A stretch of DNA of 63,693 nucleotides, the filler included, from Octopus bimaculoides (taxonomy: Eukaryota): the NCBI RefSeq assembly GCF_001194135.2. It is 4 parts of 4 records of this genome, joined end to end, with 100 filler letters (N's around TTAATTAATTAA, not from the genome) between each part and the next. Parts side by side here need not be neighbours in the genome. Positions count along the whole stretch, not along the records: positions 1 to 25,934 come from NC_068988.1; 3 more parts are not named here. One strand, 5' to 3'. A program made the translations under genes and the position numbers. The notes under the pieces were generated by a model. The model saw only the letters and a list, made by a program, of their open reading frames with translations. It did not search any database and had not been told where the DNA came from. This document shows, in pieces, positions 14,753-14,783 of the stretch; within the stretch, counting starts at the first letter, position 1; the number at the start of each line of letters is the position of its first letter.

Positions 14753-14783
14753 AGCATATATTGAAATCAGTTGCCATAACTTA
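14753..14783 (-). pseudogene. Sulfotransferase coding exon 3, 5' part (runs into an N gap), with in-frame TGA at a conserved Trp
   Basis: ttatttcag|TA AGT TAT GGC AAC TGA TTT CAA TAT ATG gives (V)SYGN*FQYM, matching the SULT YGxWF motif. The phase matches the exon 2 donor. TGA is at 14769-14767. Confidence 0.75.

What the first reader, a model, noticed from the sequence alone, without database searches (positions are those of the whole stretch)
14767..14769. In-frame TGA at the conserved Trp of the sulfotransferase: dead allele, sequencing error, or editable stop
Seen: exon 3 opens VSYGN-TGA-FQYM where the family has YGxWF, while all visible splice sites and phases are intact. TGA differs from TGG by a single A. 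Established: coleoid cephalopods recode mRNA extensively by A-to-I editing, and inosine is read as G. Inference: editing could switch this enzyme on conditionally. Against this, a 5' G neighbour is disfavoured by ADAR, the codon is 14 nt from a contig end, and a second lesion exists at 16861-16863.
Basis: partly seen in the sequence, partly recalled or inferred. Interest (0 to 1): 0.7.

Follow-up and report, generated by a model that had tools for sequence, protein, structure and literature searches.

The report
Nonsense codon in an octopus sulfotransferase paralog
An Octopus bimaculoides sulfotransferase gene copy really has a stop codon where its relatives mostly have tryptophan, and it most likely marks a copy that has recently died or is dying, not a stop that RNA editing switches off.

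Summary
On the minus strand lies a five-exon cytosolic sulfotransferase gene of Octopus bimaculoides (CM046608.1). All visible splice sites are GT/AG and the phases fit. Exon 3 opens VSYGN-TGA-FQYM, with TGA at 14769-14767. It runs into the N gap 14 nt after the A.

- Of 47 relatives, 36 have Trp at this column; the rest have L, Y, I or F.
- The RefSeq model XP_052826238.1 (167 aa) already ends at this TGA.
- The "second lesion" is real but one base off. It is Tyr134 (TAT, 16862-16860), where 47 of 47 relatives have the serine that binds the 3'-phosphate of the sulfate donor PAPS.
- The gene is a lone, deep octopod paralog, 61-71% identical to every other copy. No ortholog is annotated in O. 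sinensis, O. vulgaris or Argonauta.
- Pairwise dN/dS is 0.14-0.24, so it was constrained for most of its history and the lesions are recent.

Nothing supports editing. The site is 5'-G, A, 3'-U, the disfavoured ADAR context. No double-stranded partner is detectable in the visible sequence. Editing could not restore Ser134.

Best reading: a young pseudogene or null allele (about 0.6). An error at the contig end stays open (about 0.2). Rescue by editing is about 0.04. Only reads can decide. This is ordinary.

The parts
18720..18885 (-). Exon 1 (ATG at 18885-18883; MPEVFHKDP...LLLGYMKT + first base of Gly56); donor G|gtaacg
   Evidence: identical to the N-terminus of RefSeq XP_052826238.1 (P0006)
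16775..17095 (-). Exon 2 (321 nt). Carries the 5'-phosphosulfate-binding loop KTGTHW, the catalytic His104, and Arg126 of the 3'-phosphate motif. Acceptor tatag|, donor G|gtaaga, ends in phase 1.
16860..16862 (-). Tyr134 codon TAT. Paralogs have TCT/TCA (Ser) and 47 of 47 relatives have Ser. This is the position of the serine that binds the PAPS 3'-phosphate (human Ser138).
   Evidence: role of Arg130/Ser138 from PMC4199319
14753..14783 (-). Visible first 31 nt of exon 3 (acceptor tttcag|). The exon is 104 nt in paralogs, so about 73 nt are hidden in the gap.
14767..14769 (-). In-frame TGA at the YGNW column; paralogs have TGG, Argonauta has TAC. Neighbours of the A are 5' G and 3' U.
14262..14752 (.). 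Assembly gap (491 N). It hides the rest of exon 3 and the start of intron 3. The far flank is a (TATC)n(TA)n microsatellite.
12975..13134 (-). Exon 4 (DPVGSVAKLAEFLG...SIYRK + first base of Gly); acceptor ttttag|, donor G|gtatag
12364..12473 (-). Exon 5 coding part (G-IVGDWKNWFTVSQ...STKC, stop TAA at 12366-12364); acceptor cacag|

Best explanation
The TGA is a genuine germline G-to-A nonsense change (TGG to TGA) in a divergent, stand-alone paralog of the octopod cytosolic sulfotransferase family. It is either fixed (a young pseudogene) or a null allele carried by the sequenced animal.

The gene was a working enzyme gene for most of its history. It has recently acquired two single-base lesions: loss of the PAPS 3'-phosphate-binding serine (Ser134Tyr) and the stop at codon 168.

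Translation would end after 167 residues. The product would lack the C-terminal half, including the RKGxxGDWKNWFT segment. By inference, the mRNA would be a target for nonsense-mediated decay, because the stop lies about 87 nt before the exon 3/4 junction and a further junction follows.

Shown here: the stop, the Ser-to-Tyr change, intact splice sites, deep paralogy, long-term purifying selection, and absence of annotated orthologs. Inferred: that the base is real in the animal, that both lesions are recent, and that the transcript is degraded or gives a dead product.
For: 1. There are two independent departures at conserved positions in one gene. Column 168 is W in 36 of 47 relatives, and column 134 is Ser in 47 of 47. 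The Ser-to-Tyr change lies more than 1.3 kb from the nearest contig end, so it is not a contig-end artefact.
2. The gene is a lone deep branch. It is 61-71% identical to every octopod copy, whereas true orthologs between Octopus species are 88-98% identical. The protein search found no closer relative in O. sinensis, O. vulgaris or Argonauta hians. This suggests the lineage is dispensable and was lost elsewhere.
3. Pairwise dN/dS is 0.14-0.24. A three-point estimate for this branch gives dN 0.11 and dS 0.56. There is no frameshift or other stop in 260 visible codons. The gene is therefore not an old wreck, and the lesions are recent.
4. Neither exon 3 skipping nor the TAAG tandem acceptor keeps the frame (reading).
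5. RefSeq models end at this stop (P0006, 167 aa) or detour around exon 3 through a piece of intron 2 (P0035).
6. Other annotated members of the family also show hits at otherwise invariant motif residues: P0046 W254R and P0043 K245N. This fits a family that gains and loses copies over time.
Against: The stop is 14 nt from a contig end. The only assembly available is the same shotgun assembly re-scaffolded with Hi-C (PMC9068888; window identical to L001), so the base has no independent confirmation.

Having only one disabling stop after long constraint is also what a base error in a live gene would look like.

The orthologous position in O. sinensis and O. vulgaris could not be reached. The fetched flanks end roughly 1-2 kb short. 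Loss elsewhere therefore rests on annotation only. Expression could not be examined.
Confidence: 0.6

Rival explanations
1. Assembly or base-calling error at the contig end. The animal has TGG and the gene is intact at this codon.
For: The A is 14 nt from the end of a contig in a short-read shotgun assembly. The v2 chromosome assembly reuses the same contigs. The rest of the reading frame and all splice sites are intact, and long-term dN/dS is low. A perfect 59-nt inverted duplication lies 8 nt from another contig end in the same gene, so contig ends here may carry artefacts.
Against: Mis-recruited reads from paralogs would give TGG, not TGA, because the paralogs whose exon 3 could be read have TGG in an otherwise identical 27-nt stretch. 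A consensus error that happens to create a stop is a priori rarer than a real loss-of-function variant in a multi-copy detoxification family. The independent Ser134Tyr lesion in mid-contig already suggests relaxed constraint.
Confidence: 0.2
2. Restorative A-to-I editing. ADAR converts UGA to UGG (Trp) in some tissues or conditions, so the genomic stop acts as a conditional switch. This would be the 'harm-permitting' or premature-stop-correction type of editing.
For: Coleoids recode extensively, and in-ORF stops that overlap stop-loss editing were common enough for Shoshan et al. to join ORFs across them (PMC8382921). The change needed is exactly A to G. Lineage-specific G-to-A changes in this gene outnumber C-to-T changes (15 vs 4, Fisher p = 0.027), and none of the 15 has a 5' G. 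This is weak, but it points the way a heavily edited transcript would. Most of exon 3 and the adjoining intron are hidden, so a duplex partner cannot be excluded.
Against: A 5' G is disfavoured in all metazoans surveyed and a 3' U is disfavoured in most (PMC9989829; PMC9638939). The coleoid stop-loss events cited are UAG to UGG. The local fold has z = 0.05. No inverted repeat among the 25 longest of the 215 found touches exon 3. The best duplex with the visible pre-mRNA is -21.1 kcal/mol, against -19.2 +/- 1.7 for shuffled queries. Editing cannot restore Ser134; UAU could only become UGU (Cys). Editing would have to be near-complete to escape truncation and decay. The G-to-A excess is small, P0005 shows a similar direction (10 vs 7), and GG dinucleotides sit in constrained Gly and Trp codons.
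Confidence: 0.04
3. The TGA is decoded rather than terminating, either as selenocysteine or by programmed readthrough (near-cognate Trp, Cys or Arg insertion).
For: UGA is the leakiest stop, and near-cognate decoding can insert Trp (general knowledge, not tested here).
Against: No Rfam family, SECIS included, reaches the gathering threshold anywhere in 1-25934. No relative has Cys or Sec at this column. The downstream context UGA-UUU-CAA is not the known readthrough-promoting UGA-CUAG type (general knowledge).
Confidence: 0.01
4. The truncated 167-residue product, or a Tyr134 protein without catalysis, is itself the functional form. It would act as a non-enzymatic sulfotransferase-like protein.
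For: RefSeq annotates the 167-aa product. The long-term dN/dS is low.
Against: Exons 4 and 5, downstream of the stop, are still open and keep the RKGxxGDWKNWFT motif and canonical splice sites. That would not be expected if they had long been untranslated. Half a Rossmann-like sulfotransferase fold is unlikely to be stable (inference).
Confidence: 0.03

Closest known systems
Cytosolic (soluble) sulfotransferases, Pfam Sulfotransfer_1 (human SULT1/SULT2 families; mouse SULT2A8, PDB 7D1X/7EOV, is the best solved match)
   Same: Same domain (E = 9e-43; E = 2e-39 to solved SULTs). It has the KTGTHW loop, the catalytic His, Arg of the 3'-phosphate motif and RKGxxGDWKNWFT. The intron before VSYG is in phase 1, and the five-exon plan is shared with all octopod paralogs checked.
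   Different: The 3'-phosphate serine is Tyr, and codon 168 is a stop. It is only 61-71% identical to the other octopod copies and has no annotated ortholog in the other octopods searched.
Young duplicated or unitary pseudogenes and segregating loss-of-function alleles in multi-copy xenobiotic-metabolism families
   Same: There is a single nonsense change plus a radical change at a catalytic-site residue, in an otherwise intact intron-bearing copy. The family has lineage-specific gain and loss of copies.
   Different: It is not shown that the allele is fixed, or that the base is real in the animal. The long-term signal is still purifying selection.
Premature-stop-codon-correction editing in filamentous fungi (e.g. 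puk1 of Fusarium graminearum), and stop-loss UAG-to-UGG editing noted in coleoid transcriptomes
   Different: The fungal stop-loss example given in that review and the coleoid cases are UAG (5' U). The fungal system is reported to be ADAR-independent (title of bioRxiv 10.1101/059725). Here the codon is UGA with 5' G and 3' U, no duplex is detectable, and no RNA evidence exists.

Membership tests
Cytosolic sulfotransferase (Sulfotransfer_1, PF00685) | Significant match to the family profile and to solved SULT structures | tested here: met
   Pfam E = 9.4e-43, 146.9 bits against a cut-off of 22. PDB sequence search: 36 SULT chains at E <= 1e-20.
Cytosolic sulfotransferase (Sulfotransfer_1, PF00685) | 5'-phosphosulfate-binding loop with Lys (TYPKSGTTW type) | tested here: met
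   GYMKTGTHW; Lys54 present. The column holds K 41 and R 5 among 47 relatives.
Cytosolic sulfotransferase (Sulfotransfer_1, PF00685) | Catalytic histidine | tested here: met
   His104 (NTHL); 47 of 47 relatives have His.
Cytosolic sulfotransferase (Sulfotransfer_1, PF00685) | 3'-phosphate motif Arg130...Ser138 (human numbering) | tested here: not met
   Arg126 is present but the serine is Tyr134 (TAT vs TCT/TCA). 47 of 47 relatives have Ser. Role of the residues from PMC4199319.
Cytosolic sulfotransferase (Sulfotransfer_1, PF00685) | Uninterrupted reading frame through the C-terminal RKGxxGDWKNxFT segment | tested here: not met
   In-frame TGA at codon 168. The motif itself is intact in exons 4/5. 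About 24 codons are unreadable in the gap.
ADAR recoding site (A-to-I) | Genomic A read as G in cDNA of the same animal | not testable with these tools
   No reads or transcripts of O. bimaculoides for this gene are in the collections searched.
ADAR recoding site (A-to-I) | Favourable nearest neighbours (5' U/A, not G; 3' G, not U) | tested here: not met
   The context is G-A-U. Preferences from PMC9989829 and PMC9638939.
ADAR recoding site (A-to-I) | Edited A lies in a double-stranded RNA formed with a complementary sequence | tested here: inconclusive
   Nothing above chance in the visible sequence: fold z = 0.05, no inverted repeat on exon 3 among the 25 longest pairs listed, and a duplex search within shuffled range. 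However, 73 nt of the exon and the adjoining intron are in the gap.
Pseudogene (non-processed) | Disabling lesion in an otherwise recognisable gene copy that keeps its introns | tested here: met
   One in-frame stop, plus loss of the serine that all 47 relatives keep. Introns and splice sites are retained.
Pseudogene (non-processed) | Relaxed selective constraint on the lineage | tested here: inconclusive
   Whole-branch dN/dS is about 0.2, so it was constrained for most of its history. There are ten unique departures at cephalopod-invariant columns, against 0-5 in other copies, but this lineage has no ortholog to break up the branch. Recent relaxation cannot be resolved.
Pseudogene (non-processed) | Lesion fixed in the species and no functional product | not testable with these tools
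   This needs population genomic reads and RNA or protein data.
Selenoprotein | SECIS element, and Cys/Sec in homologs at the UGA column | tested here: not met
   No Rfam hit at gathering threshold. The column holds W/L/Y/I/F only.

The most novel reading that the evidence does not exclude
The TGA is real in the genome and is converted to UGG by ADAR in some tissue. This would make it an animal example of premature-stop-correction editing, in which a G-to-A nonsense mutation was tolerated because the site was already edited (the harm-permitting route). It would gate expression of a sulfotransferase. It would also be an efficiently edited 5'-GA site, against the known ADAR preference.
Probability: 0.04. 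Interest if true: 0.65.

Novelty: already known. Interest (0 to 1): 0.15.

Why it matters
If it is a pseudogene or null allele, it is one more case of copy turnover in a detoxification gene family. It is also a reminder that the RefSeq entry 'sulfotransferase 2A1' (167 aa) of O. bimaculoides is a truncated product, and that the separate 140-aa gene call downstream is the same gene's tail.

It would matter more only if matched DNA and RNA reads showed A in the genome and G in the transcripts. That would be a stop-correcting edit inside an animal coding sequence, at a context ADAR normally avoids. It would bear on the debate over whether coleoid recoding is adaptive or merely harm-permitting.

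Tried and rejected
1. Looking for the ortholog next to the conserved neighbour. The upstream head-to-head neighbour (P0048) has an ortholog, P0005, in O. sinensis and O. vulgaris. I fetched both loci with 10 kb flanks. The flanks are collinear with the O. bimaculoides intergenic region, but they end roughly 1-2 kb before the point where the ortholog's ATG would lie. No gene downstream of ours lies within reach to approach from the other side. Presence or absence of an ortholog is unresolved.

2. Independent sequence for the site. The chromosome-level record is base-for-base the same as the window, and it was built from the old shotgun contigs. No Logan or transcript-derived protein of this gene, nor of its O. 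bimaculoides paralogs, is in the protein collection. Expression therefore cannot be inferred either way.

3. Rescue by splicing. The TAAG tandem acceptor 4 nt downstream avoids the TGA but shifts the frame away from the conserved YGNWFQYM. Skipping exon 3 joins phase 1 to phase 0 and runs into TAA within eight codons (reading). Both rejected.

4. A second copy of exon 3 elsewhere in the visible introns. None found.

5. Selenocysteine or readthrough. No SECIS or other Rfam hit and no Cys/Sec homologs. Rejected.

6. Old pseudogene. Rejected, because dN/dS is 0.14-0.24 and there are no other stops or frameshifts.

7. Substitution spectrum as a footprint of editing. A weak G-to-A excess is present. 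The numbers are small and confounded by codon constraint, so it is not used as evidence.

8. Pfam on the transposon-like ORFs in the window. No hits.

9. Liscovitch-Brauer et al. 2017, which might list O. bimaculoides editing sites, was not found in the library under the PMC id I tried.

Full report
**What is there**

The window is Octopus bimaculoides chromosome record CM046608.1 (GCA_001194135.2), positions 93,779,907-93,805,840, + strand. The locus fetched through the RefSeq protein is base-for-base identical to the window over 21,168 overlapping positions.

On the minus strand lies one cytosolic sulfotransferase gene of five coding exons:
- E1: 18885-18720
- E2: 17095-16775
- E3: 14783-14753, then the N gap 14262-14752
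- E4: 13134-12975
- E5: 12473-12364, with TAA at 12366-12364

Every visible acceptor is AG and every visible donor is GT, and the phases fit. The concatenated product matches Pfam Sulfotransfer_1 at E = 9e-43. It matches 36 solved cytosolic sulfotransferases at E <= 1e-20. No other sulfotransferase copy is in the window.

**The observation**

The minus strand reads tttcag|TAAGTTATGGCAACTGATTTCAATATATGCT and then N. With the phase-1 G from exon 2 this is V-S-Y-G-N-stop-F-Q-Y-M, and TGA is at 14769-14767. The A is 14 nt from the contig end.

In paralogs exon 3 is 104 nt and begins TGAATTATGGCAACTGGTTTCAATATATGCTACAG. Over positions 5-31 ours is 26/27 identical to them, and the one mismatch is the G-to-A change that makes the stop. 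About 73 nt of exon 3 are hidden in the gap. No second copy of exon 3 exists in the visible introns.

The Trp is frequent but not invariant. Among 47 relatives the column holds W 36, L 3, Y 3, I 3 and F 2. Both Argonauta copies have Tyr; the codon is TAC in the one whose DNA was read. One O. vulgaris copy has Leu.

Codon 134 is TAT (16862-16860) where paralogs have TCT or TCA. That column is Ser in 47 of 47 relatives. By alignment it is the serine of the Arg130/Ser138 motif, which binds the 3'-phosphate of PAPS.

**Existing annotation**

- RefSeq XP_052826238.1 ('sulfotransferase 2A1', 167 aa) ends exactly at this TGA.
- The downstream exons are called as a separate 140-aa product.
- The older model XP_014770772.1 (304 aa) avoided exon 3 by splicing in a piece of intron 2.

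So the stop is already on record, though not discussed. The chromosome-level assembly was made by adding Hi-C data to the earlier shotgun assembly (PMC9068888). It therefore gives no independent confirmation of the base.

**Evolutionary setting**

O. bimaculoides has at least five other copies. O. sinensis and O. vulgaris have matching sets, and orthologs between species are 88-98% identical. Our gene is only 61-71% identical to any of them. In a neighbour-joining tree it sits as a lone deep octopod branch.

The large protein search found no closer relative in O. sinensis, O. vulgaris or Argonauta hians.

I tried to read the orthologous position directly. The head-to-head upstream neighbour (P0048) has an ortholog, P0005, in both Octopus species, and its upstream flank is collinear with ours. 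However, the 10-kb flanks stop roughly 1-2 kb before the expected position of the start codon. Loss of the ortholog elsewhere therefore rests on annotation only.

Codon-level comparison gives pairwise dN/dS of 0.14-0.24, with dS near saturation. A three-point estimate for our branch gives dN 0.11 and dS 0.56. With no other stop or frameshift in 260 visible codons, the gene was under purifying selection for most of its history. The two lesions must be recent, or in the case of the TGA, not real.

Our copy has ten unique departures at columns invariant in the other cephalopods, against 0-5 for the others. Most are conservative, and the comparison is biased because the lineage has no ortholog in the set. 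Other annotated copies also carry hits in invariant motifs (P0046 W254R, P0043 K245N). This fits a family that gains and loses copies over time.

**Testing the editing idea**

- The target A has a 5' G and a 3' U. Across 22 holozoan species, 5' G is disfavoured in all metazoans and 3' U in most (PMC9989829). The bias against 5'-GA sites is well characterised biochemically (PMC9638939).
- Coleoid transcriptomes do contain in-ORF stops that overlap stop-loss editing, but the case described is UAG to UGG (PMC8382921).
- In the visible pre-mRNA I find no partner strand. The 148-nt local fold is no better than shuffles (z = 0.05). None of the 25 longest of the 215 inverted-repeat pairs found in 12365-18885 touches exon 3. 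The best duplex between the 31 nt and the rest is -21.1 kcal/mol, against -19.2 +/- 1.7 for shuffled queries. This test is incomplete because most of the exon and the adjoining intron are in the gap.
- Editing cannot repair Tyr134, since UAU can only become UGU (Cys).
- One weak observation points the other way. Lineage-specific G-to-A changes outnumber C-to-T changes (15 vs 4, Fisher p = 0.027), and none of the 15 follows a G. The numbers are small, GG dinucleotides lie in constrained Gly and Trp codons, and paralog P0005 shows the same direction (10 vs 7). The TGA itself is in the opposite context.

**Other escapes**

- The TAAG tandem acceptor and exon 3 skipping both break the frame (reading).
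- No SECIS or any other Rfam family is found, and no relative has Cys or Sec at the column.

**Verdict**

The most likely account is a real TGG-to-TGA change in a dispensable, divergent paralog that has also lost its PAPS-binding serine. That makes it a young pseudogene or a null allele of the sequenced animal (about 0.6). The transcript would give a 167-residue fragment and, by inference, be subject to nonsense-mediated decay.

A contig-end base error in a live gene remains a serious rival (about 0.2). It is weakened because paralog reads would contribute TGG, and because of the independent mid-contig lesion. Editing rescue is not excluded but has no positive support and several counts against it (about 0.04). 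Decoding of the UGA and a functional truncated protein are remote.

The decisive data are genomic and RNA reads at CM046608.1:93,794,673 and closure of the gap. None of this can be done with the collections at hand. As it stands the finding is correct as an observation and ordinary in meaning.

Noticed in passing
window 14753-14783 (-); L003 13275-13378; L004 18488-18591; L005 41441-41544: The first ~43 nt of exon 3 are identical between paralogs P0005 and P0003, although their overall dS is about 1.1. They are nearly identical in our gene and in Argonauta, third codon positions included. This suggests gene conversion or a constraint at the RNA level, such as a splicing enhancer or a structure.
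   Followed up: partly
window 18473-18531 and 18594-18652: A perfect 59-nt inverted repeat with a 62-nt spacer lies in intron 1 and starts 8 nt from the contig end at the 18185-18464 gap. It is either a real hairpin-forming repeat pair or a fold-back assembly artefact. It bears on how far contig ends in this assembly can be trusted.
   Followed up: partly
window 17354-17530 and 17953-18129: A 177-nt inverted repeat, 83% complementary and 422 nt apart, lies in intron 1. It would form a long intronic dsRNA, the usual kind of ADAR substrate, but it is far from exon 3.
   Followed up: no
window 15103-15726 (+): A 208-aa open reading frame lies on the opposite strand inside intron 2. It looks like the C-terminal part of a mobile-element protein by eye, but has no Pfam match. 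Intron 2 is about 2 kb here against about 0.5 kb in the paralog P0005.
   Followed up: partly
window 2108-3432 (-): Three adjacent ORFs (139, 214 and 81 aa) resemble a decayed retroelement. One has a GIY-YIG-like stretch by eye. No Pfam match.
   Followed up: partly
window 12364-13618 (-) and 16152-16427 (-): Annotation artefacts caused by the stop and the gap. The gene's tail is called as a separate 140-aa product whose N-terminus comes from intron 3. The older 304-aa RefSeq model replaced exon 3 with an ORF from intron 2.
   Followed up: yes
coding exons of the gene (window 12364-18885, -): Lineage-specific G-to-A changes (15) outnumber C-to-T changes (4). All 15 are nonsynonymous and none follows a G. 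The excess is small and confounded, and is left unexplained.
   Followed up: partly
proteins P0046 (O. bimaculoides) and P0043 (O. sinensis): Other annotated family members carry substitutions in otherwise invariant motif residues: W254R in GDWKNWF and K245N in RKG (numbering of our protein). Some 'intact' copies may also be impaired.
   Followed up: no
all N gaps of the piece (4901, 9663, 14262, 18185, 20589, 23274, 24458, 25340): At most gaps at least one flank is a microsatellite or other simple repeat. The right flank of the 14262-14752 gap is the exception, because it ends inside a conserved coding exon.
   Followed up: partly
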